DNA of 64,000 nucleotides from Anolis carolinensis (taxonomy: Eukaryota). The notes below the pieces were generated by a model. It saw only the letters and a program-made list of their open reading frames with translations. It did not search any database and was not told where the DNA came from. This document shows positions 629 to 18,095 of the stretch, one piece after another. The translations under genes were made by a program, and so were the position numbers. Numbering within the stretch: position 1 is the stretch's first letter; every line of letters begins with the position of its first letter. The stretch is from assembly GCF_035594765.1 (NCBI RefSeq), contig NC_085844.1, positions 34,549,923-34,613,922 of the forward strand, written 5' to 3'.

Positions 629-1446
629 AACTACAGTTTACCAACTGAATAAATGACATGGACACTTATGTAATTTTTTTTAAAAATCAATGAGTCTACC
701 CTGGTTGAGACATAACAACTTGATTGAACCCAATGAGTAATAGCAGAGAATGTCCCCCCTCCCCCCAGAATTGGGCAGAAAGAAGGAAAGATAACTAAAA
801 ATGTTCATAGCTATATCAAAAAACAGATTAAATTTTGAGTCCGGGTTATCTGAAAAGACAAGATTCTCCCATACAAATTGTGCTGAGGCTTCAAAATCTG
901 TGGAGAGAGAACATTCTCTTTATCTCATCTTTGTCTCTTTAAACTTCTGAGGGATTTGAGAAGATAACACCTTTCTATTCCAGCAGGCTTTGGGCAATTA
1001 TCTAGACATAAAAGACATTTGCTTGCACTGAACATTACCATTGGTGTTACTGATGTAGTTGTTTCGAATAACTTAATTTGTGGAGTAACTTTATAATTGG
1101 TTTAATTGCATTTTCATATTGGTAAGTTAGCTTGCCTTTTAATTAGTTTGTAAGTTGCTTTGGATCTCGGTTCTGAGAGAAAAGAAGAATACAAATCAAA
1201 TCAGCTTACCTTCAAAAACATTGCCAAAATGGCCGCACCATCATTTTTTCTACAAGCATCGAGATAATTGCTATATTTGGAACACCAGTGTACCAACTGA
1301 ATCTGAAACAAGGAAAATACAAATGCTGTCACTTGGCAGGAATGCTAATAATGCATTACTAACATCACACGATAATGTCCTAAGTGGGGAGAAACATTAA
1401 GATAATAAGTGCGTATATAAGTAAATAAATACCTAAATGGACTCAC

Positions 1447-1565
1447 CTCTCCCGCATGCCTTTGCAAATCCACAACATGTTCCGAGCCTTTGTCATCTGT
1501 AGAACCCCAGTGTATGAGCAGCTGACGCAGCCTATAAATATTTGGAAGTGGTCCTCCTCTCAGTA
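1447..1565 (-). CDS. CA3: Carbonic anhydrase 3-like, exon 3 (VLRGGPLPNIYRLRQLLIHWGSTDDKGSEHVVDLQRHAGE); His94 replaced by Leu
   Basis: 119 nt, canonical size. ttgcag acceptor and gtgagt donor, phase-compatible with exon 2. LRGGPL, HWG, GSEH and AGE motifs. Confidence 0.93.
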
Positions 1566-2711
1566 CTGCAATAAAGAGTTTAAATTAGAATCCAAACATC
1601 TCAAAGGATTGTGTGTGTCAAAATAAAAGGCACAACCAGGTGCTTCTTTATTTTATTTATTGGTTACATTATATCCTTCCCTGAGCTCTATGAAAGCCAG
1701 CATGGCATAGGAGTTTGGGTGTTGGACTATGACTCAAGACCAGGGTTCAATTCCCCATTTAGCCATGGAAAACTATTGCGTGACATCTGGAATGTCACAC
1801 AATCTCAGCCCTAGAAAACCCTGTAATAGGTTCATGTTAGAGTGACCATAATAGGTTCACATTAGAGTCACCGTCGGTCATATATGACTTGAAGACACAC
1901 AAGAACAACCTGAGCAATATGGATTTACACATCTCCACATTTATCCATACAGAAAGCTTGTGAGGTAGATGGGGCTGAGTGCAACAGGAACCTAGATCTC
2001 CCAGATTCCAGGCTAACATTACCCCTTCACCACACTTGCACATAGTATAAACACCTTTATTTAAGAGGCAATTATTATTTAAGAGTAAATATGGCTGCTA
2101 TCCACTGCCTTTCATAAAGAAATTATCAGCCAGTATCTGGGTTCTCTAATAGATGACAAGACAAAAGAATCAGGATAGCTGATAGCTCCCATAATAATCC
2201 AGCCTCCATGACCACTACCAAGCCAGCAGGAAGTATATCTTTTCAAAACTCTGCCTGGTAGGCTGCTCAGATAATACTTTGATCGTCTATTCATCTCTTC
2301 TCTTCCCAGGCCTGATACTCCAAGAAGGATTAGATGGCTGGGTCTAGTAATCTCTTCAATGTTCTACAACAATACACTATAAAAATTCAAAATGCTGGCT
2401 CAACTGATCCACCGACAGTCCTACCAGGACATGCTGATGGGCAAGGTAGTCTATCGGTAGTCCTTCAGAGGGTGTTTTGCTGAGCAGCAATTCAAACAGT
2501 GGACTACAAGCAAATAAATCTCCAAAGTAAATAAACTACAGATTATAGGGTTACTTTGCTTCAGGATAAAATAGAACCAGCTATTTGTATATCAGTTGAT
2601 GTTAGTGAAAAGGCAGAGGTATAAGGATAAAGATGAGTGGGAGAAAGAGGCAATGGTATGTGAAAAAGAAGACAAATATAGCCAGGATAACTTGGATGAG
2701 AGAAGAAGATA

Positions 2712-3028
2712 CAGTAGAGTCTCACTTATCCAACACTCGCTTATCCAATGTTCTGGATTATCCAACGCTTTTTTGATGTTTTCAATACATCGTGATATTT
2801 TCGTGCCAAGTTCGTAAATACAGTAATTTCTACATAGAATTACTATGTATTGAACTACTTTTTCTGTCAAATTTGTGGTATAACATCATGTTTTGGTGCT
2901 TAATTTGTAAAAGCATAACCTAATTTGATGTTTAATAGGCTTTTCCTTAATCCCTCCCTATTATCCAACATATTCGCTTATCCAACGTTCTGCCAGCTCG
3001 TTTATGTTGGATAAGTGAGACTCTACTG
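2712..3028. mobile_element. Tc1/mariner-type MITE, copy 1
   Basis: TIR CAGTAGAGTCTCACTTATCCAA, TA TSD. Confidence 0.9.
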
Positions 3029-3391
3029 TAAAAAATTACAAAAGAAAGGGAGGGTGAAAAAGATGAATCCAAATAAATAGGATGAAAAGTAGTGAAAGCA
3101 ACAAGGAAGGAGACAATGGGCAGAGCTACACAGTGGTACAACCTACAAGCATTTCACACCAAGAAAGGAAGCTGTATACAACTGCAACAATTTAGGAGAG
3201 GAGGGAGAAAGCAGCAATCCTACAGCATTCAATCACTCTCAAGGGAGAACTTCTGTTAGAATTTTCACACTTTTTGCTGAGTCCGGGTCTGAAACTTTGA
3301 GGAAAGTTTGGGGAGGGGGGAGTGTGCATGATAAGCCAACAAGTGGGTGCTATGAAGAAATTACAACAGCCCCTTCAATATCATCTGCAGC

Positions 3392-3668
3392 CAGGGCTGT
3401 AGCCAGAAAAAAATTTTGGGAGGGATTTTGAAAATTTGGGGGGGGGGGGTTGAACCTCTGACCCACCCGCCCCACCAGGTTCAGACCTGTCAATATCTGC
3501 TTGAGATAGTGCCTGGAGGGACTCTTAATATTTTACATCTTATAGACTTAGCATGGGGATTTGGTTAACCAGTTAAAATTCATGAGTAAACCAGGTTTTT
3601 TTTTAACCTGAAAATTTGGGGGGGGGGGTTTGAACCCCCTAACCCCCCCCCCCCTCGCTACAGGCCTG
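3392..3668. mobile_element. hAT MITE
   Basis: CAGGGCTGTAGC..GCTACAGGCCTG TIRs, perfect 8-bp TSD tctgcagc. Confidence 0.9.
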
Positions 3669-5591
3669 TCTGCAGCAGCAATGACTGGCAACACACATGA
3701 CATGAACACACTTGTCAGGTCACTTCATTTGCTCTAAGATTCTCTCTTGCCTTGAAAATCAGAGAAACCCTGAGATTTGAGAACCCTAGTTAAAACAGTG
3801 AAAGAGTAATGTTTCTGCAATCTAGATATGGTCCTGGGGAATAACTAGCCAATCAGCTTGATGTCAGTACCAGGAAACATTTGACAAGTGTTAACTAAAA
3901 ATCTGCTTGTGTTTCTCATGATCAAATTCTTTGATCATTATTTCAATCAGATTTCATTTTTTTCTTAGTTCAATTAGTAAAGGGAGAACCTAGATATAAA
4001 ATGTCAAGCATATTTCTAACTATATCCTTTGGATATGTTAAGAACAATTTATGGAGATTGCTGGTAACATGATGGACCTGAAATACAGTTTCTTTTGTCT
4101 TTCTAAAGTGCAAAGATACCAAAATCAGTAAATTTGGGGGAGATGGAGTGTTTCTGAGCTAGGAGAAGATGTATGGATATAAATGCAAGGGATTTCATTT
4201 TGATGTATTGAAAATTAACATGAAAACAATTCAGAGCATTGTATTTATCTTCTAACACACACACACACAGTCCCAAACATCTGGTCCTCTTACAGCTTCT
4301 ATCACTTTGGCCAATGGTCAGAGAATCACTGTTCTAAAGAAACCTACATTTTCTAAACTGACATTCACTTGACATTAAATTTCAGTATTTCTAGGATTAG
4401 GTTGAATCTTTCTCATTGGCGAGTTAAGCTGTGATTCAAATAATTAAAACAGAATCCTTCAGAGAAGTCTAAAATCTTATCAGCTCTGCTGTGAGGTAGG
4501 TTAGACAAAGAAATTGTGACTGACATAAAATAACACATAACTCTTCTGTCATAGGGAAAAACGTTAGCTGTTAAGGCACACAAAGCACCTAACCAGTGGC
4601 ACTGTAGATGTCATTGAAGTGACACAATCCTGCGTTAGAACAATAATAGCTCAAGCTTGTCATCTATGAGTAAATTATATGTCACTATGTGGGTATCAAG
4701 TGAGACTGGGCACTTGCCCAATCTTCACACTCTGCTTATCTATTAATAGAGTCTGCTTCCTAACCTAATGAAGAATCAAAGATAATGACAAGAAAAACAC
4801 TTGTAAAATACAAGTAGACATTTCACAGCACAGGAAAGGGCTTTGACATTTTGCTTTGTTTTCCTTTTCAAAGACCATGAGTACAAAACATAAGCCAACA
4901 CCACAACAGATTAGCTACATACTACTGTTCTTCTCACTAATCGGATGCAAAGAGGGCAAAATGGTTGCCTCTGGAAATGAATCAGAGCCATTACAAAGCA
5001 GAAGTGGAGCATGATACAGAGCTTCCTTCTTTTGTTCTGTATTGAATCACATTGGTCATTGGATCAACACCAGTCACAGGAGACTCTCGCTTACTCTCAG
5101 GATAGCAAGGTTACCTAAGAGGCACAGAGCAATACATGTGGCCCACACAGCTCTGACCCACTTCCAACACCACATCTCTCTTGGGAGATCTTGGGATCTA
5201 GGTTCCTCCTCAACACATTGCAAAACCCCTCCCTCTGTAAAACAGACCTATCATCCTCTTGATAAACAGTAGGTTCAGAGGGATGGTTGATACAGAAAAC
5301 ACTCATTTTGGATCTCTAATTCCACCAAAAGTACAGGTAGATATGACATCTGGGGATCCACCATTAAATAACACTGCCTTTTTAAAAAAAGTTTGGTCAG
5401 TTCTTCAAGGTGGTACAGCTTCTTATACATCACCTGAAAAGAATGCGCTTATCTCCTTTAAATATGCCTTATGTAAATTTAGGAAAAAAAATACTGTATT
5501 AATAAAACAAAAAAGAAATATACATTTAGCTTCCAACCATCTCCATAACCATAACACATAACCCAGAAGTCAACATATTATTCATATCACT

Positions 5592-5864
5592 AGGAGCCCC
5601 CGGTGTCGCAGTAAGTTAAAGCCTTGTGACTTGAAGGTTGGGTTGCTGACCTGAAGGCTGCCAGGTACAAATCCAACCCAGGGAGAGCGTGGATGAGCTC
5701 TATCAGATCCAGCTCCATGCAGGAACATGAGAGAAGCCTTCCACAAGGATGGTAAAAACATCAAAAACATCTGGGCATCCCTGGGCAACATCCTTGCAGA
5801 CGGCCAATTCTCTCACACCAGAAGCGACTTGCCATTCCTTAAGTCGCTCCTAACACACAACAAA
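5592..5864 (+). mobile_element. tRNA-derived SINE (AnolisSINE2/Vingi-partner type), full length
   Basis: A/B-box head. 12-bp TSD attcatatcact at 5580-5591 and 5865-5876. Confidence 0.85.
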
Positions 5865-6973
5865 ATTCATATCACTTTGCAGAAATCTAATTTAAAAAAT
5901 CCAATAACAAAAGTCACCAATGATTTCTCCCTAATCAAAGTTGTTAGTTTGTCCATTTTTGCTATGTCCATCGATTCCAAAAATAAAGCAATGCCACTTT
6001 TTCTAAGCACAAACAACTAGCAATACTGATCAGGCTTTTAGTGCCTGAGAATTTGGAGAGCTGACAGAACAGGCTTGACAAAGATGAAGCTACTGAGAAA
6101 TGTCCTGGCATAGCATTTTACCAGTGAACCTCATTCTTGACCTACAATACCCTGGTTCCACTGTTCTAACCCTAGGTCTCCTGAGATACTAAACCGATCT
6201 TTTATTTGCAGCCTAAAAAGGTAAAGGAGCCCACGTCTCCTGGGATGGAAAGCTAATATAACCCATTGTCCTGTGGCAATCCCAGATGGCCTTTTCTTTG
6301 AACAACATTCAAGTTCTTTGACCTCCAGCAACAGCATGGAATTTCAAAGTTAATGCTACCACACAACTTAAATCCTTCTGTGCTGGAACATGTCAAGTCT
6401 ACTGTCAGTGATTGATATCCAATGTGCTGGAACACCCAAGGATAAAACATGTGTTAAGCACAGGGCAAAAGGCTTAGCTTCGCCTTTCCTTTTGTTGGCA
6501 CAGAGATGCTTGCTCACGCAAAGCACTCTCTCCCTTTGGACTGTGTAATTCTTCTCATTCCAATTGGTATATAGATGCACTCATACAAAAATAAATCACC
6601 ATCACCAGAAAACAATTATGTAAAGATCTCAAAGTCCCATATGAAGAGTGCATACATTCTTGCACATGACAAATAAGGACATGAACACAGAACAAAACAA
6701 AAGGCAAGAGAGGCCCAGCAGCAAAGAGCTAGAATAAAGAATAAAATTCCCACTAGACTAAGTGTTATAACCCAATAAGTATGTTCTGGTGGTTTGTCTT
6801 TTAGCACATATGCCGAAGCTAGGGCACAACAATGATTACAGGTTGACTCTCCCTTTCGCAAAATCCTTGGGATCCAAAGTTTTTCAAACTGTTTTTTCTT
6901 CATATTTTGGAAAACTTCAATTTGCATAAAGTGAATAAGGCGTGGTGGGGAATGGGCTAGTCACACATCTAGC

Positions 6974-7244
6974 CAGGGCTGTAACCAAGGGGGGGGGGGA
7001 GTTAGCGGTTCAACCCCCCCCCCCCCCCAAAAATCAGTTTTTTTAACTTGGTTTACTCATGAATTTTAACTGGTTAACCAAAATCCCCATGAGTGTCAAC
7101 TGAAGTTTATCAATGGATCCTGATTTCTAAATTATTTTGCGTTATGGAACTACTCTTCATGATTCGCTAAAAAAAAGTTTCAACCATCACCACCACCACC
7201 ATCACCACCCCACCCCCCGAATTTTTTTTCTGGCTTTGGCCCTG
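6974..7244. mobile_element. hAT MITE, relative of 3392-3668 in opposite orientation
   Basis: CAGGGC..GCCCTG ends, perfect 8-bp TSD catctagc. Confidence 0.88.
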
Positions 7245-8194
7245 CATCTAGCATCCACTGAGTTTAAGTCAAAGAGCCATGATGCAGAGAGGAGGAGAAC
7301 TCCACTTAAAAGTTATATAAAAAGCAGATGTCTGTGATCCTTTCTCAATTGTCAACTTACATTTCTCCTTTTTAGAAAAGTAGCCAAGAAGTAAAAGGAC
7401 CCTCCAACCCCCCCCCCCCCAAAAAAAACCTTTTTAATTCTGTCTGGGCTGGATACAAGCGACCAATACTTTTACTCCCACTCTGTTTGTAAGGCTCCCG
7501 CCTTGCCCCAACATTTGCAGACACTGGGTGTTTGACTAGCCCCCTTTCCCAGAGGAGGAAATTTGAATATGGCAGCACAACTTTCAGGTTTTGGAGGATT
7601 TAAGATTTCCAGATAAGGGAGAATCAATCTGCCGTAGCACAACAAGAAGAAACATAAATGTAGCCACAGCATTTCAACAACTTCACAAGTAATACCACAA
7701 GGAGATATGCTGTTACAACTATTTAGGATCTGTATACAAAGTCCTAATACTTAAATATTTGAAGCACTTTCAGGAAAATCTGGAAGCAGCTGCATATGAG
7801 AACTCCCTTGAGAACTGCAGCTTCAGAGTGCAATTGAAATGAACAAACAAACATAAAACCCACTTAATTTATGGCTGAGATCAAAGGGACTGAAACTAGA
7901 CATATTCTTCTGAAAAGTCATGTTGCAAACTCTTGTCAAAATTCTAGCCTTCCCTGTCTCTACAGCCATAATGCATTTTGGTGCCTTCCAAAAAAGATTT
8001 TTTTTTCTTATCTGATCCAACTCTGTATATTTTACTATACAAAAGTATTATCCTTATTTATAGGCTAAAAATTGCTAAGTATTCACTTCAGTATCTTTTC
8101 TTCTCAGGGAGAAAAATCAGTTTGAAGGAAAATTACATTGACCAATAAGAATGACTTTAATGTGTATTTTCAGAAACATGTCCTTAGTATTATA

Positions 8195-8502
8195 CAGTAG
8201 AGTCTCACTTATCCAACATAAATGGGCCGGCAGAATGTTGGATAAGCGAATATGTTGGATAAAAAGGAGGGATTAAGGAAAAGCCTATTAAACATCAAAT
8301 TAGGTTACGATTTTACAAATTAAGCACCAAAACATCATGTTATACAACAAATTTGACAGAAAAAGTAGTTCAATACGCAGTAATGTTACGTAGTAATTAC
8401 TGTATTTACGAATTTAGCACCAAAATATCACGATGTATTGAAAACATTTGACTACAACAATGGTTGGATAATCCAGAACGTTGGATAAGTGAGACTCTAC
8501 TG
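8195..8502. mobile_element. Tc1/mariner-type MITE, copy 2 (inverted relative to copy 1)
   Basis: Same TIRs and internal sequence, TA TSD. Confidence 0.9.
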
Positions 8503-9664
8503 TATTAGCAAAATCAAGGAGGTGGAAATAATCTGATGGATTTGCTAGACTGCAAACATACAGCTGAGAATATAATGAGTAAGACGTGACTTTGGCATGT
8601 CTTTTCTCATGCTTATTAATTAGAATATTATGTTTTTTTCTTGAACTCCCACAAAGTACTGTAGGTAAATCCCGCCACATAAAAAGGTAAGATTAAAACC
8701 CCTTCTGTCAATGCATAGTGGTCCTCATCTACCCAACGAGTACAAATAAAAAAAAGTTAATGTATCACAGGGTTTAAGCGTAAAATACTTCAACAATCCA
8801 TCTGTTGGATTGCAGCCTTAAACAACAAATTTCCATAGGAATATGCCTCATTGAACAAAGGGATACTTCTACTGCATCCTAGGGTCTTCTGTGAACAGGA
8901 GTCCTTCCTCTCTATGTTTTAGTATGCAAAAATATTACCAGTCTAATTATATAGTTCTTCATCTCTTAGAAACAACAACCATATACCTGACCAATTTGAG
9001 ATCTACTAACATTAGATCAGCATCACATGCCTATCTGGTGACATTCAAGCTTTAAATAACAAAGACCTTTGTCTGGAAAGTACCCTGTTGGAAACTGTTA
9101 TTATTTACTACATTTCTTGAATGCCTTTTAAAACAAACAAAGAAAAATAAAAAAAAAACCAAAGCAAGTGTTAAAATAAAATACATGACCATAACACAGA
9201 GCAACATCTCCCCTAGCCTAGAACAAATAATAGGTATTAATACTTGGCCCAAAGCACATCTTTTAAAATCAGCATCTTGCCACAAACTCTTCATATCTCC
9301 ACCATTGTGGGAGCTTGATTATAAAATATATGAGCATGTAAATAAAATGTGGAGCTAGTAGATGAGTAAAATATAGCTCCACAAAGGACAATGGGGAGCA
9401 CGAGCAATTTGCTCCTTCATAACACAATAAGAGCCAAATGTTTCTCTCAGTCCTCTAAAAATGGATGAACTGATTTGTAGATATTTTGCACTTGCTGTCA
9501 GTCTTTCATTTTCTTAGAGAAATGCAAAACAGTAACATCACAGACTGTAAAACAGGGACTGTACTAATGGAATAACCATATATAAAGAAAAAGAGGGGAT
9601 TTTAACAACTCGGTGATGTGCTTTTTTACATGGAACCAGGTCACATCCAGATCAATCATGGTTG

Positions 9665-9885
9665 CTCTCAGATGTATGTCTTCAGGTCACCTGTTGACAT
9701 AATGATCCCATGAATTTCCTAGGTTTTTCTTAGGCTAGTAATATTCAGAGTGGGTTTTCCAGTTCCTTCCTATGAAATATAGCCTACAGTACTGCACATT
9801 TATTAGCTGTCTCTTATCCAATTACTAAACAGGGCTGAATGTGCTTAGCACCTAAGATCAGATAGGGTCTGGTGCCTTTACAGTA
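9665..9885 (-). mobile_element. 5S rRNA-derived SINE (5S-Sauria type)
   Basis: 9780-9875 aligns by eye to the reverse complement of 5S rRNA, degenerate. Related copies at ~33125-33285 and the split copy 23190-23253/25691-25820. Confidence 0.75.
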
Positions 9886-10386
9886 TTTATGCATGGGCAC
9901 ACATACATAATTGCCACCCCAAACAATTATATTTTGAGCATCCAACAAATACCGAGTTGAAAACTTTGGTAGCCTTTCCTTCTTCCATTTCTCCTTAGAG
10001 CAGAGGTGGGCAGAGTGCGGCCCTGGAGTTGTACACATCCTACAAAGGTCGTTCTTGACCCTTCAGACTCCCCAAATCAACCTGCTTGGAGAGATGGATG
10101 AGGTAGAGCTTACAAACGATAGTTTTTTTGGTATCTGAAGGCTAGAGCGTTGGTAGGGAAACATTCCAAAGGTCCCTCTCATAGGCCCTACCCACAATAC
10201 TTGAAGGTTACAGCACCAGGACATAGACATTTTAGGAGTCCTTCTCAGAGGGCATGCACATCAAATTTTGACCATTCATAAAATCCTAAAGCTAACAATG
10301 AGTATTTTTTAATAAATGGCATTAGAAAATCTATACCCAGGCTATGCTGGGTCCATGAGCCAGGAATAGATAAAACAGGAACTTAC

Positions 10387-10584
10387 CTGAGCGATCAAAT
10401 GTGTCATCAAATGCAATCCGGCAACCTTTCCCCGTGTTCTTTATGGTCTTAGATGCACCTGGATCATAACCAGTAAACCAAGGCAACAGAATAGGGTCAC
10501 TGTGGACATGCTTGGTAAGGATTGCTACAGGTGATTGATTACTCCCTCCAGCAAACGGATAAGCTTCACGCCAGCGATCCGGAC
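10387..10584 (-). CDS. CA3: Carbonic anhydrase 3-like, exon 2 (GPDRWREAYPFAGGSNQSPVAILTKHVHSDPILLPWFTGYDPGASKTIKNTGKGCRIAFDDTFDRS)
   Basis: 198 nt, the canonical size of this exon in CA1/2/3. tag acceptor and gtaagt donor. QSP motif, plus GK.CR with the CA3-diagnostic K64 and R67. Confidence 0.93.
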
Positions 10585-11847
10585 CTAGGAGGAGGAGCAG
10601 ATCCACAAGGCATGATCTCACAATTCCCTTCACTCTGTTCTTGTAAATAGCTAAGCATATAATTGCTTGCATTAATAGAAAAGCAATTAATATATTATAA
10701 AGGATTACAGTTGTTAAAGGGATCAAGCCCTTTGGTTTGATAACAAAAGGAAAAAAAAACACACGTCTTCAAAGCTCAAGTGCCAGATAACTAAAATCCA
10801 GCTGCTCGTTTTACTCACTGGAAAGGCATTTTATTATTACATTTGTTGTTCCAGGCAACTTAGTTTAGGTTGGGATTTTATCCACAGCCAGTGCAGTGCA
10901 ATACAATGATGAACTGGTTTAACTGCACAAGACACTCAAGGAACAAGGACACTCCAGTATGTTAGAGTGGACCTGTGTCTGCATATCTTTCTGAGATTAG
11001 CACAAGATGGCAGACAACCCAGACAAACACTTGCACAATGAGATTTTGGAGTCTTCCTTACACAACCCAATAAAAAGTGCACGAGTTTCCATAACTAGCC
11101 AAATATGCAAGTGGAAGTCACCAATAAAGTAGTACCATTGCCTTCACAATAACCCTATGGGACAGATTAAATAAGCAGGTTTGGAACCTGGGTCTTCCAC
11201 AAGCTAATCTAACACCAACGCCCCACGCTTGCACTCAGCACATGAGTGTAACATTTAGGTTATCAAGTGAAATTGGGGGACAGGGTTTGATTGAGTAGTA
11301 GAGGGGATTTCAGCAGTACTGCTGTCATGAAATCATTCAGAAAATTCCTCTTCTACATAACCATTCAAAGTACAGCCCTATCCCTTATTTCACCTGAATC
11401 CACTGGGAAAAGAGGATCTTGAAAGCACATACATACCCACATTTTCAAGTGCTCGTTAAATGGCTGGTTTTTTTTGAAAAAAAATATTTTGGGAAAAGCC
11501 CAATCTATTTTAGCCAATGTATATATTCCAATGGCCTCCTTCAGGGATTACATAAAAAGCAAATAAAATAAAAATGAAAAACGATGCCATATAAAGGGGC
11601 AAGGGATCCTAAGAAGTGGGATGAATTTTATGATGCAAAAGAGGGACACCCCCCCCCAAATGAGAGCAGAGAGGACTTCACTCCATAAATGGGAAATTCT
11701 GAGCCTAAATCAAGGGTTTCCCCCCCCCCCCCCCTAATATTTGCCCTGGCAATATGTAAGTGGCAAGTATTAAAAAATATTAGTACTGTATTACTATAAT
11801 AGTATATAGAGTATATATAGTATACAGTGTAGCACCAAAATATGCCT

Positions 11848-11966
11848 ACACACACACACACACACACACGTGTACATACATATATATGAACATTATGCAT
11901 GTACATGTTTTGTGTATGCATGTATGTATGTGTGTGCATCTATCTATCTATCTATCTACACACACA
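11848..11966. repeat. Compound (CA)n/(TA)n/(TATC)n microsatellite
   Basis: Seen directly. Confidence 0.9.
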
Positions 11967-12496
11967 TAAATTATTTGGAAATGTTGCCTTTTTTGAATTG
12001 ATGTTTCCAGAACAGTATCAGCTTTATCTCAGGAAAGTTCTGGGAGCTGCATATATATACATGCTCTGTGTATTCATGCATGGTGGGGTGTTGTGGCCTC
12101 TTCCAGTTCTATGATTCCATGATAGTACATGCCAAAGAAGTGTGACAGCAGGCATTGTTTCACTGCTGTGAATTCTATGTACACCACTCTGAGTCTTGTT
12201 CAAGAAAGATTGCCAGTACTGTAATTAAAATATCTGTCATATCTGCTGTAATGAGTAAAATACAGGTGAAGGCAAGGAAAATTTTGGAACTCTGTAGTAG
12301 TAAACACACACACTTTGCAAGCAGACTATCCCAGTTTCAACACTGTTCAGGAAACCAGCAAGTGGAAGAGATGGAGAAAGAGCCAGACCCTGAAGAGCTG
12401 CTTGACATAGGGAGCTCATCGGCCTGTAGACGTTGGACTCCAATTCACATCAGCCCTGACCAGCCTGGCCTTTAGTAAAGGATGGTAGTAGTTCAA

Positions 12497-12735
12497 TGTG
12501 TTCTCGAAGGCTTTCATGGACAGAATCACAGGGTTGTTGTGTGTTTTTCAGGCTGCATGGCCATGTTCCAGAAGCATTCTCTACTGAGAATGCTCCTCAC
12601 AACCTCAGAGGTATATATACATACCTCACAACCTCTCACAACCTCTGAGGATGCCTGCCATAGATGTGGGCAAAACATCAGGAGAGAATGCTTTTGGAAC
12701 ATGGCCATACAGCCCGGAAAACACACAATAACCCG
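12497..12735. mobile_element. Palindromic Penelope pLTR remnant in intron 1
   Basis: Inverted arms ~12530-12581 and ~12683-12734. Same sequence family as 13655-13750 and 17030-17160. Confidence 0.8.
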
Positions 12736-12999
12736 ATGGTAGTAATTGTTGCTCATCAACATTTGAAGGGAAACATGATAATCAATGAGGAAAAATAGCA
12801 GGCCAGAAGTTGGGAGTTGAAGTCCTAAACACTTGGAGGGCCGAAGTTTGCCCATGCCTGGTCTGGAAACACTCAAGATGCATGAGCCCAGATAAAAAAT
12901 CCAAATCTCTGCCTGCCTCATTTTCCCATCCCAAGCCTTAATTCGCCTTCTCTCCACTCTGGGAGGTCTTGGGAAAGAGGTCCTTTCCGGAGTTCCTTT

Positions 13000-13360
13000 T
13001 GAAGAGGAGCACCGTGCGTTTTAATGCACTGCCTCCTTTTCTCCCCACAGATCTCGAGAGGGAGCTGCAGGTCTGTCCCTGCGACTCACCTTTATCCTTC
13101 CCGTATCCCCACGGCGCGTGGGTCATGGTCTCAGCTCGGGGGCCTTTGGGCTCGGGCTCCTTTCGCCAGCGGGTCGGCACCAGGCTGGCAGCGGACCCGC
13201 GCTGCCCCGGCCATTTATATGGGCGCCCACCCCAGACGCCTTGGGCAGGAACCGGGCGGCAGAGGGGAGGGGGATCGCCCTGTTCCGAGGGGAGGAGCCC
13301 TGCCACGGAGCCCCTCGACGGCCCCGAAACCTCCAAGGTTTCCTCGCAGGTTGCAAAGAG
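13000..13360 (-). promoter_or_regulatory. CpG-island promoter of the CA3-like gene with TATA box (TATAAA 13214-13219), CACCC box (~13228) and GC box (13254-13259)
   Basis: Strongest GC/CpG-rich stretch in the window. TATAAA lies about 90 bp upstream of the ATG. Confidence 0.8.
13090..13126 (-). CDS. CA3: Carbonic anhydrase 3-like, coding exon 1 (MTHAPWGYGKDK-G)
   Basis: gaccATG start. WGY motif typical of the cytosolic CA N-terminus. 37 nt ending in phase 1 at a G|gtgagt donor, inside a CpG island with a TATA box. Confidence 0.9.
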
Positions 13361-13710
13361 CGATCAGAGCCCTTGGGTTGTGCAGAAGGGAAAAGGGGCT
13401 CCCAATGCCTGCTCAGTCACGCTACACAATTCCTCTTTAATTATTTGGCCACTCCTCGTGGGAATGAAACCACTGGGGCTTGTGGTTCCAGGAAGCACTA
13501 GAGGGGCTTTGAGCTGAGAATTCCAAGTGCCGAAAACTACACATCCCAAGATTCCAAAGGATGGAACTACAAAAGCTCAAGCACTATAGTTGCATGGTGT
13601 GGAAATGCCCCTCACTTCTACGCTGTAGAAGTTTGACACCACTTTACCATTACAAAATGGATTGCTGTGAGTTTTCTGGACTGTATGGCCATGTTTCAGA
13701 AACATTCTCT

Positions 13711-13969: not shown

Positions 13970-16585
13970 TTTTTTATTATTATATCATCTTTATTGACGT
14001 TTAATAGGTACATTATTTAAAACAATATGGTGGGTATCGGGGGGGGGGGGATAGGGGAAGGGGGGGAGAGAGAGTGGAAAAGTAGGGATAGGAAGGAAAA
14101 GCAAGGAAGGTAGGGGATCTTGGGGATGGGGATGGGAGAGATAACAAAAAGGGGTTCTGGGGGTAAGGAAAGGGGGCAACGGGGATGATGGTCTTCCTTT
14201 ATCTTCCATATCGGGTATTAAAGTCATCTGTTTAACATTGTTTTTTCTGTCTTCATTGTGAGATATAATTTCTAAGCTTCTCCCAATTTGTTTGATCAGT
14301 TCCCTTTCCTCTGGACTCTTTCAACAAAAAAGTCAGTTTGTCCATTTCCTGTATTTCCATCAGTTTTTGAAGCCATGCTTCCTTCGATGGTAGTTCAGCC
14401 ATTTTCCAATTTCTTGCGAAAACTATTCTTGCCGCTGTGGAGCTATACATAAATAAAATATCGTCATTTTTATCAAACTGTAAGTCTGTGTTTGTTATTC
14501 CCAAAAGGTAATATTCTGGTTTAATTGGAAATTTTTTCTTTAAGATACTTTGTGTCTCTTCATGGATCATCTTCCAAAACCTTTTAGTTTTCTCGCAAGA
14601 CCACCAGACATGGTAGAATGAGCCTTCATGTGTTTTACATTTCCAGCAGGTGCTGTTATAGGACTTGTACATCTGTCCGAGTTTTTTGGGAGACATGTAC
14701 CATCGATGGAAATTTTTTAGCCAATTCTCTTTTAATTCCGTGGCATAGGTATATTTTAGTTTTTTGTTCCATAACCGTTCCCAGTCTTCTAACATGATAG
14801 GGTGTCCGATGTTTCTAGCCCAGGTAATCATACAGCTTTTAATTGTTGTCGTTTCTGTTGACCATTCTAATAATATATCATAGATTTTAGAGATGACCTT
14901 CTTTTCAGTTAACATAATTCTGTCCCACCCGGAGTTGGAATCGTTGAAGCCTATACGAGCATCCTTGGTATATTGTTCCTTGATGACAGCATATTGGAAC
15001 CAGGATATATTTTTAAATTTTTCTTTTAACCTTTCTTGTGGTATCAAGTCATAAGTCCCGTTGTTTTTTACCAGTAGATCTTTATACCGAGGCCAGACGG
15101 GCCATTGTAAGATATGGCTTTGAGATGATTCGAGTGAAGAGATCCATAAGGGGATTTTATTATAGAACCTCTTTTTGTACTTTTCCCACACTTTTATTAG
15201 AGCGGCTCTAATAAAGTGGTTGCCAAAGTTCTTTTCAACCTTTCTTTTGTCGTAGCCCACGTACGCGTGCCATCCTCGTCGGAGATCAAAGCCTTCTAAG
15301 ATCAGTATATTATTATCTTTTAGTGCTATCCAATCTCTCACCCAGTTTAAAACACAGGCTTCATAATAGAGTTTTATATTTGGTAATCCAAAACCCCCTC
15401 TTTTTATTGCATCAGTCATAGTATTATATTTTATTCTCGGCCTTTTGCCTTTCCATACAAATTTTGTAATATCTTTATTCCAATCCTGAAATACTTTTTG
15501 TGTTCTTAAGATGGGTAAATTTTGAAATAGATACATTAATTTCGGGAGTACATTCATTTTAATGACCGCTATTCTTCCTAGGAGGGAGATGTTTAAACTT
15601 TGCCAATTTTGTAAGTCGGTTTTTATTTCCTTCCATTTACTTTGATAATTGTTTTTTAATAACTGGGCGTTTTTGGCAGTTATCCAAATTCCGAGATATT
15701 TAACTTTCGCGACCGTCTTAAATCCTGTGGCTTCTTCCAATTTCCCTTGATTTTCCTGTACTATATTTTTGGTCAGAATTTTTGTTTTTTCCTTATTTAT
15801 GAAAAAACCCGCTACTTTGCCGAATTTTTCCATGTTGTTAATCCATTTTTTTATGTGTCTACGGGGGTCTTCAATAAAACAAACAATGTCATCAGCAAAG
15901 GCACGGATTTTGTATTCTTGGTTTCTAATTTTAGTGCCTTTTAATTGGTCGTCATTCCGTATATTTCTGATCAAAATTTCTAAAGCAAATATAAAGATAA
16001 GGGGGGAAAGGGGGCATCCCTGCCTTGTTCCTTTTTCAATTTGGATAGTTTCTGAATGTTGCCCATTAATTAACAATTTTGCTTCTTGATTAGTGTAGAT
16101 CGCCTCGATTGCATTTATAAAGTAGTAGCCCATATCCAATTCTCTTAGCAGCAATTTAAAAAATTCCCAATTTAAATTATCAAAGGCTTTTTCAGCATCA
16201 ATTGTTATCAAGGCCAATTCTTTTTGATGGAATGTTTCATAATATTCTATAATATCTAATACGCACCTGACATTATCTTTCATATATCTATTTGGCAGGA
16301 AGCCTTTTTGTTCAATCCCTATCCAATTATTCAGAAATATTTTGAATCTATTTGCAAGGATTGTTGAAAAGATTTTGTAGTCTGTATTCAGTAATGATAT
16401 TGGCCTAAAATTCCTTACATTTGCAGTGTTTGTATCGCTTTTTGGGATCACTATAATGTCCGCTTGTCTCCAAGAGTTCGGTATTATCTTGTCTTTCAGT
16501 GCCATGTTCATTATTTCTTTTAGGTAGGGCATAATGTCATCTGCCAAAGTTTTATAAAAGTTCAGTGTGAATCCATCAGGACCTG
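13970..16585 (-). mobile_element. 5'-truncated young L1 LINE (ORF2 RT and C-terminal CCHC, 3'UTR, poly-A), 31-bp TSD
   Basis: Uninterrupted ORF from PGPDGF through RPISLLN, QGCPLSP, FADD and CWKC..H..WSC. T-run at ~13967-13975. TSD gatgaagcaacctggacaacgcatatcattt at 13939-13969 and 16586-16616. Confidence 0.95.
14253..16585 (-). CDS. L1 ORF2 reverse transcriptase fragment (no endonuclease domain)
   Basis: 783-aa ORF in the track; its first residues derive from the TSD. Complete set of RT motifs. Confidence 0.85.
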
Positions 16586-18095
16586 GATGAAGCAACCTGG
16601 ACAACGCATATCATTTGAGAACACAGAAATGCTGGACCACACAAACAACCACCATGTCTGACTACACAGAGAAGCCATTGAAATCCACAAGCATGTGGAC
16701 AACTTCAACAGAAAGGAGGAAACCATGACAATGAACAAAATCTGGCTCCCAGTATTTAAAAAAACTCTAAAATCAGGACAGTAAATAAGGAACAACACTA
16801 AAAAACAGGGGGATTTCAGACAAGAAAAAATCAGGGCCAACTAATCACCTCCTAACAAAGGAGTCCCCTAGGCAGGAAGCAGCCAAGCTTTGAAGCTGCA
16901 AGGCTATTCAATGCTAATCAAGGTGATTGATTGCAACATTCACACTTGCTTCAAACAGACAAGAGTTCTTTCTCCCATCCTGGACCTTTCAAAGATATAT
17001 AAACCCCACTTGCTTAGTTTCCAACAGACCTCACAATCTCTGAGGATGCCTGCCAAAGATATTGGTGAAAGGTCAGGAGAGACTGTTTCTGGAACATGTC
17101 TATACAGTCCAGAAAACTCACAGCAACCCAGTGATTTGGGCCATGAAAGCCTTCGACAACTCATTAAAGCACTATAGTTGTATGGTGTGGAAATGCCCCA
17201 GAGGGTACATCTATGCTATAGAAGTTTCACATCACTTTAACATTACTCAGTGCTTTGTAGTCATGGCAGCTGTAGTTTTGCAGGATCTTTACCCTTCTCT
17301 GCCAAAGAAGGCTGGTGCCTTGTCAAACCACAATTCCCAGGATTCCATGGCAATGAGCCACCACAGGTAAAAGTAGTGTCAAACTGTTCTTTCTGTTGTG
17401 TGAATGCACCCCTGGAGAATAGGGCTCCAAGAGGTACTAGCAGTCTTTCATTGAGAACTCTAAGTGCCCCTCCCTAAATTAGAAATTGCATAATTCCATA
17501 GGATGGACCTACAAAAGTTCAACGTGAAATCATAGTGCTCTGTTCGTGTAGTGTGGACATGCCCTAAGGATCCCTCCTGCTAGGTTTACCATCTTGATTC
17601 AAAAATAGTTGGGATTTTAGAAAGCAACACTTTCTCCCTCCCTTCCTTCCTTCTTCTCCCTTTTTTCTTTTCATTCCCACTTCCATTTCTCAACCAAGTT
17701 CAGGAAATGCTACTTTCTGGACTGTGACTTCCAGCATCCCTGGACAAAGTACTCACAAGTGAAGATGGTGGGAGTTATCATTCGGAAAGTAACATTGCCC
17801 AGCTATGTTCTGTGAACACTAGATGCCCATGAACATATGGAGGTTTGGTCAGCTGAGAGCAAACCATGTGAGCCAAGTTCATTTGCAGACATCTGCATGG
17901 GGTTATAGAGAAGTGTTTACAACAGTTCTGAGAGCTGGAGGTTTACATTTGACTATACAATTGTCAGGAGTTGCCTGAAGTCATTTTGTGCCATAAGGCA
18001 GCAGACAAGATGTCACTTTCATCAATGCCATGTACAAAAAACAAGCAGACGGGCAGAGAAATATTACTTCAGTACTTGGTATTACTTCAGCACAT

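What the first reader, a model, noticed from the sequence alone, without database searches (positions are those of the whole stretch)
1447..13126. CA3-type carbonic anhydrase lacking zinc ligand His94 (H94L): candidate independently evolved acatalytic CA
Seen: exon 3 reads RLRQ-L-L-I-H-W-G where active alpha-CAs read Q-F-H-x-H-W-G. The His94 codon is CTC at 1516-1518, one base from CAC. The ORF, six splice-site and start signals, and the promoter look intact, and H96, E106-H107 and E117 are retained. Other nearby positions also differ from human CA3 (N62T, T65G, F93L, VDLQRH for VDGVKY). Known: H94, H96 and H119 bind the catalytic Zn, and the recognised acatalytic CARPs (CA8/10/11) have Arg at 94 and form separate clades. 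Inference: this is a CA3 paralog that lost or strongly reduced CO2 hydration but is maintained for another role (binding, scaffold, redox). H119 lies outside the window.
Basis: partly seen in the sequence, partly recalled or inferred. Interest (0 to 1): 0.85.

Follow-up and report, generated by a model that had tools for sequence, protein, structure and literature searches.

The report
Lizard CA3 lacking two zinc ligands
The only carbonic anhydrase 3 gene I could find in the green anole is intact, spliced and under purifying selection but has lost two of its three zinc-binding histidines, and the first of them has been lost repeatedly across lizards and snakes and in every frog and salamander checked, which suggests this protein is kept for something other than hydrating CO2.

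Summary
Confirmed and stronger than reported. The gene is Anolis carolinensis CA3 (exons 1-4 identical to XP_003219614.1). Codon 94 is CTC (Leu) in four runs from four studies. The zinc triad is therefore L-H-Q. It is no pseudogene: seven intact exons in ten squamates, dN/dS 0.18 overall and 0.11 on the Anolis tips. It is not a spare beside an active copy: it is the only CA3 found in squamates, ortholog of one of two turtle/crocodile/bird CA3 genes. His94 is replaced in 16 of 31 squamates (Leu, Gln, Asn, Arg; 10 parsimony steps), while H96, E106, E117, T199, R67, R91 and F198 never change. All 27 frogs and salamanders have Gln94, 11 also Gln119; 95 mammal, bird, turtle and crocodile CA3 proteins keep all three histidines. 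Best reading: an acatalytic CA3 kept for a binding role. Loss of activity is inferred, not measured. Ten literature searches found no report of this. The scan noted it only on this stretch.

The parts
13213..13220 (-). TATA-like box, 94 nt before the ATG, in a GC- and CpG-rich promoter
   Evidence: a similar box lies 59-118 nt before the ATG in 9 of 10 squamate loci; CpG o/e 0.71 at 13100-13400 against 0.23 for the window
13090..13126 (-). exon 1 coding part (37 nt), with W5 and Y7
10387..10584 (-). exon 2 (198 nt), with the CA3 marks K64 and R67; N62T
   Evidence: best PDB match CA III E 5e-23, CA13 3e-11
6120..6630 (.). conserved non-coding element in intron 2, probable enhancer (function untested)
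   Evidence: 70-81% identity over 470-630 bp in 8 non-Anolis squamates, indels, no shared ORF, no Rfam match
1447..1565 (-). exon 3 (119 nt): R91, Q92, L94, H96, E106, H107, E117
1516..1518 (-). codon 94, CTC = Leu in place of the zinc ligand His94
   Evidence: no other letter in four runs
1510..1512 (-). codon 96, CAC = His, the one retained zinc ligand
   Evidence: (joint 1302/1447)
1297..1299 (-). codon 119, CAG = Gln in place of the zinc ligand His119
   Evidence: also Gln in Anolis sagrei

Best explanation
This is the squamate CA3 ortholog turned pseudoenzyme. Shown: intact, spliced gene under purifying selection, CA III fold, triad L94-H96-Q119. Inferred (about 0.85): one His and one Gln cannot hold a catalytic zinc in the cell, so CO2 hydration is absent or negligible. 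Inferred (about 0.8): constraint on catalysis was already relaxed in the squamate ancestor; His94 was then replaced many times, and in Anolis His119 went first (shared by both species), followed by two separate His94 changes (CTC, CAA). Most likely retained function (about 0.45, least certain step): a cytosolic binding protein whose basic cleft (K64, R67, R91, Y131, F198, T199, W209) and surface hold an anionic ligand or a protein partner without needing the metal.
For: L94 and Q119 in genome, reads and a spliced contig. Seven intact exons in 10 species. Codon model: omega 0.18; Anolis tips 0.11, p 3e-10 against 1; branches that lost His94 0.18 vs 0.19 elsewhere, p 0.85. Model pLDDT 94, TM 0.96-0.97 to CA III. 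His94 needs 10 parsimony steps, the most among 58 columns invariant in 27 reference CA2/CA3; 40 of them need none. Site 94 best omega about 3, rejects 0.2 (p 8e-6), does not reject 1 (p 0.06). R67, R91, F198, T199, W209 invariant in 31 squamates, K64 in 30. All 27 batrachians have Q94, 11 also Q119. H94A gives the largest zinc-affinity loss among CA II mutants (PMC10175565). CARPs lack one or more of the histidines and are inactive, often R-H-Q (PMC4981384). Mammalian CA III has 0.16% of CA II activity and no known function (PMC5402959) and binds SQLE directly (PMC13113631).
Against: No activity or zinc measurement exists here. Cleft residues may be conserved for folding rather than binding. 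15 of 31 squamates keep H-H-H and may be weakly active. Gln94 is fixed in all batrachians, which could mean a weak carboxamide metal site is selected there. No partner, ligand or tissue of expression was identified. The exon 1-2-3 joints were not seen in my reads.
Confidence: 0.72

Rival explanations
1. Acatalytic, but kept as an abundant thiol/redox sink rather than a specific binder.
For: Mammalian CA III is S-glutathionylated at Cys183 and Cys188 (PMC6098850). Squamates keep C203 and C206 (31/31), C239 (29/31) and C260 (28/31); A. carolinensis has 7 Cys.
Against: Cys183 and Cys188 are Ile and Asn here and occur almost only in mammals. A thiol sink does not explain an invariant cleft. Exposure of the squamate cysteines was not computed.
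Confidence: 0.13
2. A weak enzyme remains: H96, Q119, E106/T199 and water hold zinc loosely enough for residual CO2 hydration or another low-level reaction.
For: H96, E106, E117 and T199 are invariant. Replacements at 94 are mostly Gln or Asn. From my own knowledge, the single CA II mutants H94N, H119N and H119Q (structures 1H4N, 1H9N, 1H9Q appear) still bind zinc and keep some activity.
Against: Leu cannot ligate, and here it is combined with H119Q. Leu94 arose three times (A. carolinensis, lacertids, Varanus). Lineages with and without His94 show the same omega. Plausible for N/Q-H-H species, much less for L-H-Q.
Confidence: 0.11
3. A decaying gene or a redundant duplicate on its way to pseudogenisation.
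For: Two catalytic residues lost; the Anolis branch is among the longer ones (0.17); one RNA-like contig runs from exon 3 into intron 2.
Against: omega 0.11 on the Anolis tips, no stops or frameshifts in 10 loci, conserved promoter and intronic element, no second CA3 to be redundant with. The run search favoured runs that hold intron words.
Confidence: 0.03
4. CTC is an assembly error or a rare allele.
For: CTC is one base from CAC; contigs drop rare variants.
Against: Same letters in four runs of four studies; 17 runs hold all sampled words; the RefSeq/UniProt protein is identical; non-His residues in 15 other squamates.
Confidence: 0.01

Closest known systems
Mammalian carbonic anhydrase III (CA3/Car3; PDB 1FLJ, 1Z93)
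   Same: Same clade (100/99), exon structure and fold (TM 0.96-0.97, 55-56% identity); K64, R67, R91, F198 marks.
   Different: Mammalian CA III keeps H94/H96/H119 and weak activity; this protein has L-H-Q and lacks Cys183/Cys188.
Sauropsid CA3, second copy ('B' type: tuatara, and one of two CA3 genes of turtles, crocodilians and birds)
   Same: Ortholog: squamates plus tuatara group with it at 100/99.
   Different: All sampled non-squamate members keep three histidines; the other ('A') copy was not found in squamates.
Carbonic anhydrase-related proteins CARP VIII, X, XI and the R-H-Q CARPs of invertebrates
   Same: Works like them: alpha-CA fold lacking zinc histidines, 94 replaced, 119 to Gln, 96 kept (PMC4981384, PMC2873310).
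   Different: Separate origin inside the CA3 clade; residue 94 is variable (L/Q/N/R/H) instead of a fixed Arg; the anole has its own CA8, CA10 and CA11 (PMC2873310).
Frog and salamander CA3 (e.g. Xenopus tropicalis XP_002939197, Ambystoma XP_069477394)
   Same: Independent loss of His94, then H119Q in several neobatrachians; N62 lost and L118 mostly Ile as in squamates.
   Different: Gln94 is fixed there; K64 is not kept. I found no paper describing these as acatalytic either.

Membership tests
alpha-carbonic anhydrase fold (PF00194) | Pfam domain and fold | tested here: met
   (265 bits, cut-off 27)
CA3 orthology group | Groups with CA3 apart from CA2/CA7 in a tree | tested here: met
   100/99; CA8/10/11 were not in the tree
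CA3 orthology group | Lys64, Arg67, Arg91, Phe198 | tested here: met
CA3 orthology group | Seven coding exons with conserved boundaries | tested here: met
CA3 orthology group | Position in the CA13-CA1-CA3-CA2 cluster | tested here: inconclusive
   no neighbouring gene within 10 kb flanks or 50 kb upstream
Active alpha-CA | Zinc triad His94/His96/His119 | tested here: not met
   L-H-Q
Active alpha-CA | Gatekeepers Glu106 and Thr199 | tested here: met
Active alpha-CA | Bound zinc and CO2 hydration | not testable with these tools
   needs recombinant protein
CARP as a functional class | Lacks one or more zinc histidines in an intact, maintained gene | tested here: met
CARP VIII/X/XI clades | Descent from CA8, CA10 or CA11 | tested here: not met
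   nested in CA3
Mammalian redox-active CA III | Surface Cys183 and Cys188 | tested here: not met
   Ile183, Asn188
Pseudogene | Disabling changes or dN/dS near 1 | tested here: not met

The most novel reading that the evidence does not exclude
CA3 is a further, unrecognised vertebrate pseudoenzyme lineage caught in transition: its selected function needs no zinc, it has shed the catalytic site once in the frog-salamander ancestor and many times in squamates, and loss of His94 may even be favoured (site omega about 3). These proteins would be natural catalytic knock-outs that expose the real role of CA3, possibly in mammals too.
Probability: 0.55. Interest if true: 0.82.

Novelty: new variant of a known kind. 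Interest (0 to 1): 0.72.

Why it matters
The papers I read list three acatalytic vertebrate CAs (VIII, X, XI) and count CA III as active. Why CA III, a very poor enzyme that makes up 8-30% of soluble protein in slow muscle and fat and whose knock-out is nearly normal, is kept at all is an open question (PMC5402959). Sister species that differ at His94 (Pogona/Phrynocephalus, lacertids/Rhineura, vipers and elapids/pythons and colubrids, Gekko/other geckos) and the double loss in Anolis and several frogs give a natural series in which catalysis can be separated from the selected function. It also means that CA3 in Anolis, Xenopus and axolotl, all model animals, is probably misread as an active enzyme.

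Tried and rejected
Assembly error and pseudogene: rejected. A His94 CA3 paralog in squamates: none in three protein searches, none by profile search of the window, the flanks of 10 CA3 loci or an Elgaria CA2 locus; the full stretch between CA3 and CA2 was not covered, and the Varanus CA2 look-up failed, so an unannotated or decayed copy is not excluded. Relaxed selection after His94 loss: not seen (p 0.85). Pure neutrality at 94: doubtful, as ten changes avoid Tyr, Asp and Pro (about 0.006 by chance). Positive selection at 94: not shown (p 0.06, site chosen beforehand, 10 species only). Wider convergence between squamates and batrachians: weak (6 shared of 21 and 18 sites, p 0.04). The intron-2 element as coding exon or known RNA: rejected. 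Single-sequence fold failed (pLDDT 29). NCBIfam gave nothing. Ten paper searches found no report on reptile or amphibian CA3 lacking zinc ligands; the library lacks most subscription papers, and two papers I wanted were not held.

Full report
Observation. The minus strand carries a carbonic anhydrase gene with exon 1 coding part 13126-13090, exon 2 10584-10387 and exon 3 1565-1447, with canonical splice sites. Exon 3 aligns without gaps to CA III residues 79-117 and has Leu where His94 stands. Exon 2 matches CA III far better than CA13 (E 5e-23 against 3e-11). Four runs from four studies show no other letter in exon 3; 17 listed runs hold all sampled words (some may be the source of the assembly). 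So CTC is real.

A correction. One RNA-like contig joins 1447 to 1302 across a 144-nt GT-AG intron and continues past 1207 into sequence outside the window. This reveals exon 4 at 1302-1210. It aligns to CA III 118-148 with Gln at 119. Two of three zinc ligands are thus gone: L94-H96-Q119. The contig carries both codons, so they are transcribed and spliced, if the run is RNA (the tool's guess; the spliced joint supports it). The same contig runs from exon 3 into intron 2; my run search used intron words and so favoured such runs.

Identity. The four window exons are identical to XP_003219614.1, carbonic anhydrase 3 of Anolis carolinensis, and the window is 100% identical to GCA_035594765.1 over 23,126 bases. 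Exons 5-7 of that locus are intact and keep F198, T199, T200. As the operators required, I searched the window exon by exon by reference and did not join the exons for any search; the full-length protein used for the tree, fold and later searches is the database record P0159 that a tool returned. Codon statistics were computed in scripts from exon codons. N runs in L002 and L007 were left alone. Human CA2 and CA3 protein records returned by the protein search served for numbering and as tree rows; no human contig was met.

Orthology. In a maximum-likelihood tree the gene falls in the CA3 clade (100/99). Turtles, crocodilians and birds have two CA3 types; squamates and tuatara group with one of them (100/99; same in the quick 74-row tree). 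A search with the other type found no squamate member, nor did searches with squamate queries, and a profile search found no other CA exon in the window or the flanks of the fetched loci. The simplest reading is that squamates have one CA3; absence of the other copy is not proven.

Selection. Ten squamate loci all have seven intact exons. Pairwise dN/dS is 0.10-0.28. A codon model gives 0.18 overall, 0.11 for the two Anolis tips (p 3e-10 against 1), and no difference for branches that lost His94 (0.18 vs 0.19). The promoter box and a 500-bp non-coding element in intron 2 are conserved. The AlphaFold model with an 88-row alignment has pLDDT 94 and TM 0.96-0.97 to CA III; that shows compatibility with the fold, not metal binding.

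The wider pattern. Residue 94 in 31 squamates is His in 15, Asn in 6, Leu in 5, Gln in 4 and Arg in 1. In the ten loci read at DNA level every replaced codon is one base from CAC: CTC, CAA, CAG, AAC, CGC. On a species tree written from my own knowledge this needs 10 amino-acid steps, the most among 58 columns that are invariant in 27 reference CA2/CA3 proteins, 40 of which need none; counted by hand as His versus not-His, the minimum is about 7. It is the most changed codon in the 10-species set, with best site omega about 3, which rejects 0.2 but not 1. Tyr, Asp and Pro never appear, so the strand still limits what is tolerated. H119Q is shared by both Anolis, whose codon 94 differs (CTC, CAA), so 119 probably changed first there. 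All 27 frog and salamander CA3 proteins have Gln94, 11 also Gln119; the one caecilian keeps His. All 95 mammal, bird, turtle and crocodilian CA3 records checked keep H-H-H (some are isoforms of one gene).

How it most likely works. His94, His96 and His119 bind the catalytic zinc, and proteins lacking one or more are the acatalytic CARPs, often with R-H-Q (PMC4981384). H94A causes the largest loss of zinc affinity among the CA II mutants compiled in PMC10175565. A Leu at 94 combined with Gln at 119 should leave no usable site; this is inference. What stays fixed is the basic cleft of CA3 (R67, R91, F198, T199, W209 in 31/31; K64 in 30/31; Y131 in 30/31) and 117 of 260 columns overall. I therefore favour a zinc-independent binding role, for an anionic ligand or a partner; mammalian CA III has a reported direct partner, SQLE (PMC13113631). 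The mammalian redox cysteines 183 and 188 (PMC6098850) are absent, though four other cysteines are conserved. A residual-activity reading stays open mainly for the Asn/Gln-His-His species.

Comparison and novelty. By descent it is a CA3; by active site it fails the test for an active alpha-CA and works like a CARP, but is not CA8, CA10 or CA11, which the anole has separately (PMC2873310). Independent origins of acatalytic alpha-CAs are known in invertebrates, so this is a new variant of a known kind. What I did not find described is an acatalytic CA3, its repeated origin in squamates, or its fixation in batrachians (ten searches; the library is incomplete, and the sequences are public and automatically named CA3). 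The scan's own notes hold only this same stretch.

Verdict. Real, stronger and broader than first reported; interest 0.72, limited by the lack of any biochemical or expression evidence and by the incomplete literature check.

Noticed in passing
window 6120-6630 (intron 2): Non-coding element 70-81% identical across gecko, lacertid, monitor, agamids and snakes, about as conserved as the exons; probable CA3 enhancer. A weaker conserved patch lies at 4637-4846.
   Followed up: partly
amphibian CA3 proteins, e.g. P0318 (Xenopus tropicalis), P0328 (axolotl), P0278 (Rana): All 27 frogs and salamanders have Gln94; 11 neobatrachians also Gln119; the caecilian Rhinatrema keeps His94. A second, older, independent loss.
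   Followed up: partly
window 1566-1690 and beyond, run X18: A contig spliced across exons 3-4-5 continues unspliced into intron 2; partly spliced RNA or a start inside intron 2. No in-frame ATG upstream of exon 3 before the first stop.
   Followed up: partly
P0183, P0186, P0194, P0112, P0188: Vipers (Q92H, H94N) and elapids (H94Q) also share T200M; skinks have Q92S with H94N: second-shell residues change together with His94.
   Followed up: no
P0223, P0226: Some turtle B-type CA3 have L198 and E200 while keeping all three histidines.
   Followed up: no
window 14253-16604 (-): 783-codon ORF with a reverse transcriptase domain (PF00078), probably a LINE-type element, about 1 kb upstream of the promoter.
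   Followed up: partly
tree: Turtles, crocodilians and birds have two CA3 types; lepidosaurs appear to keep only one.
   Followed up: partly
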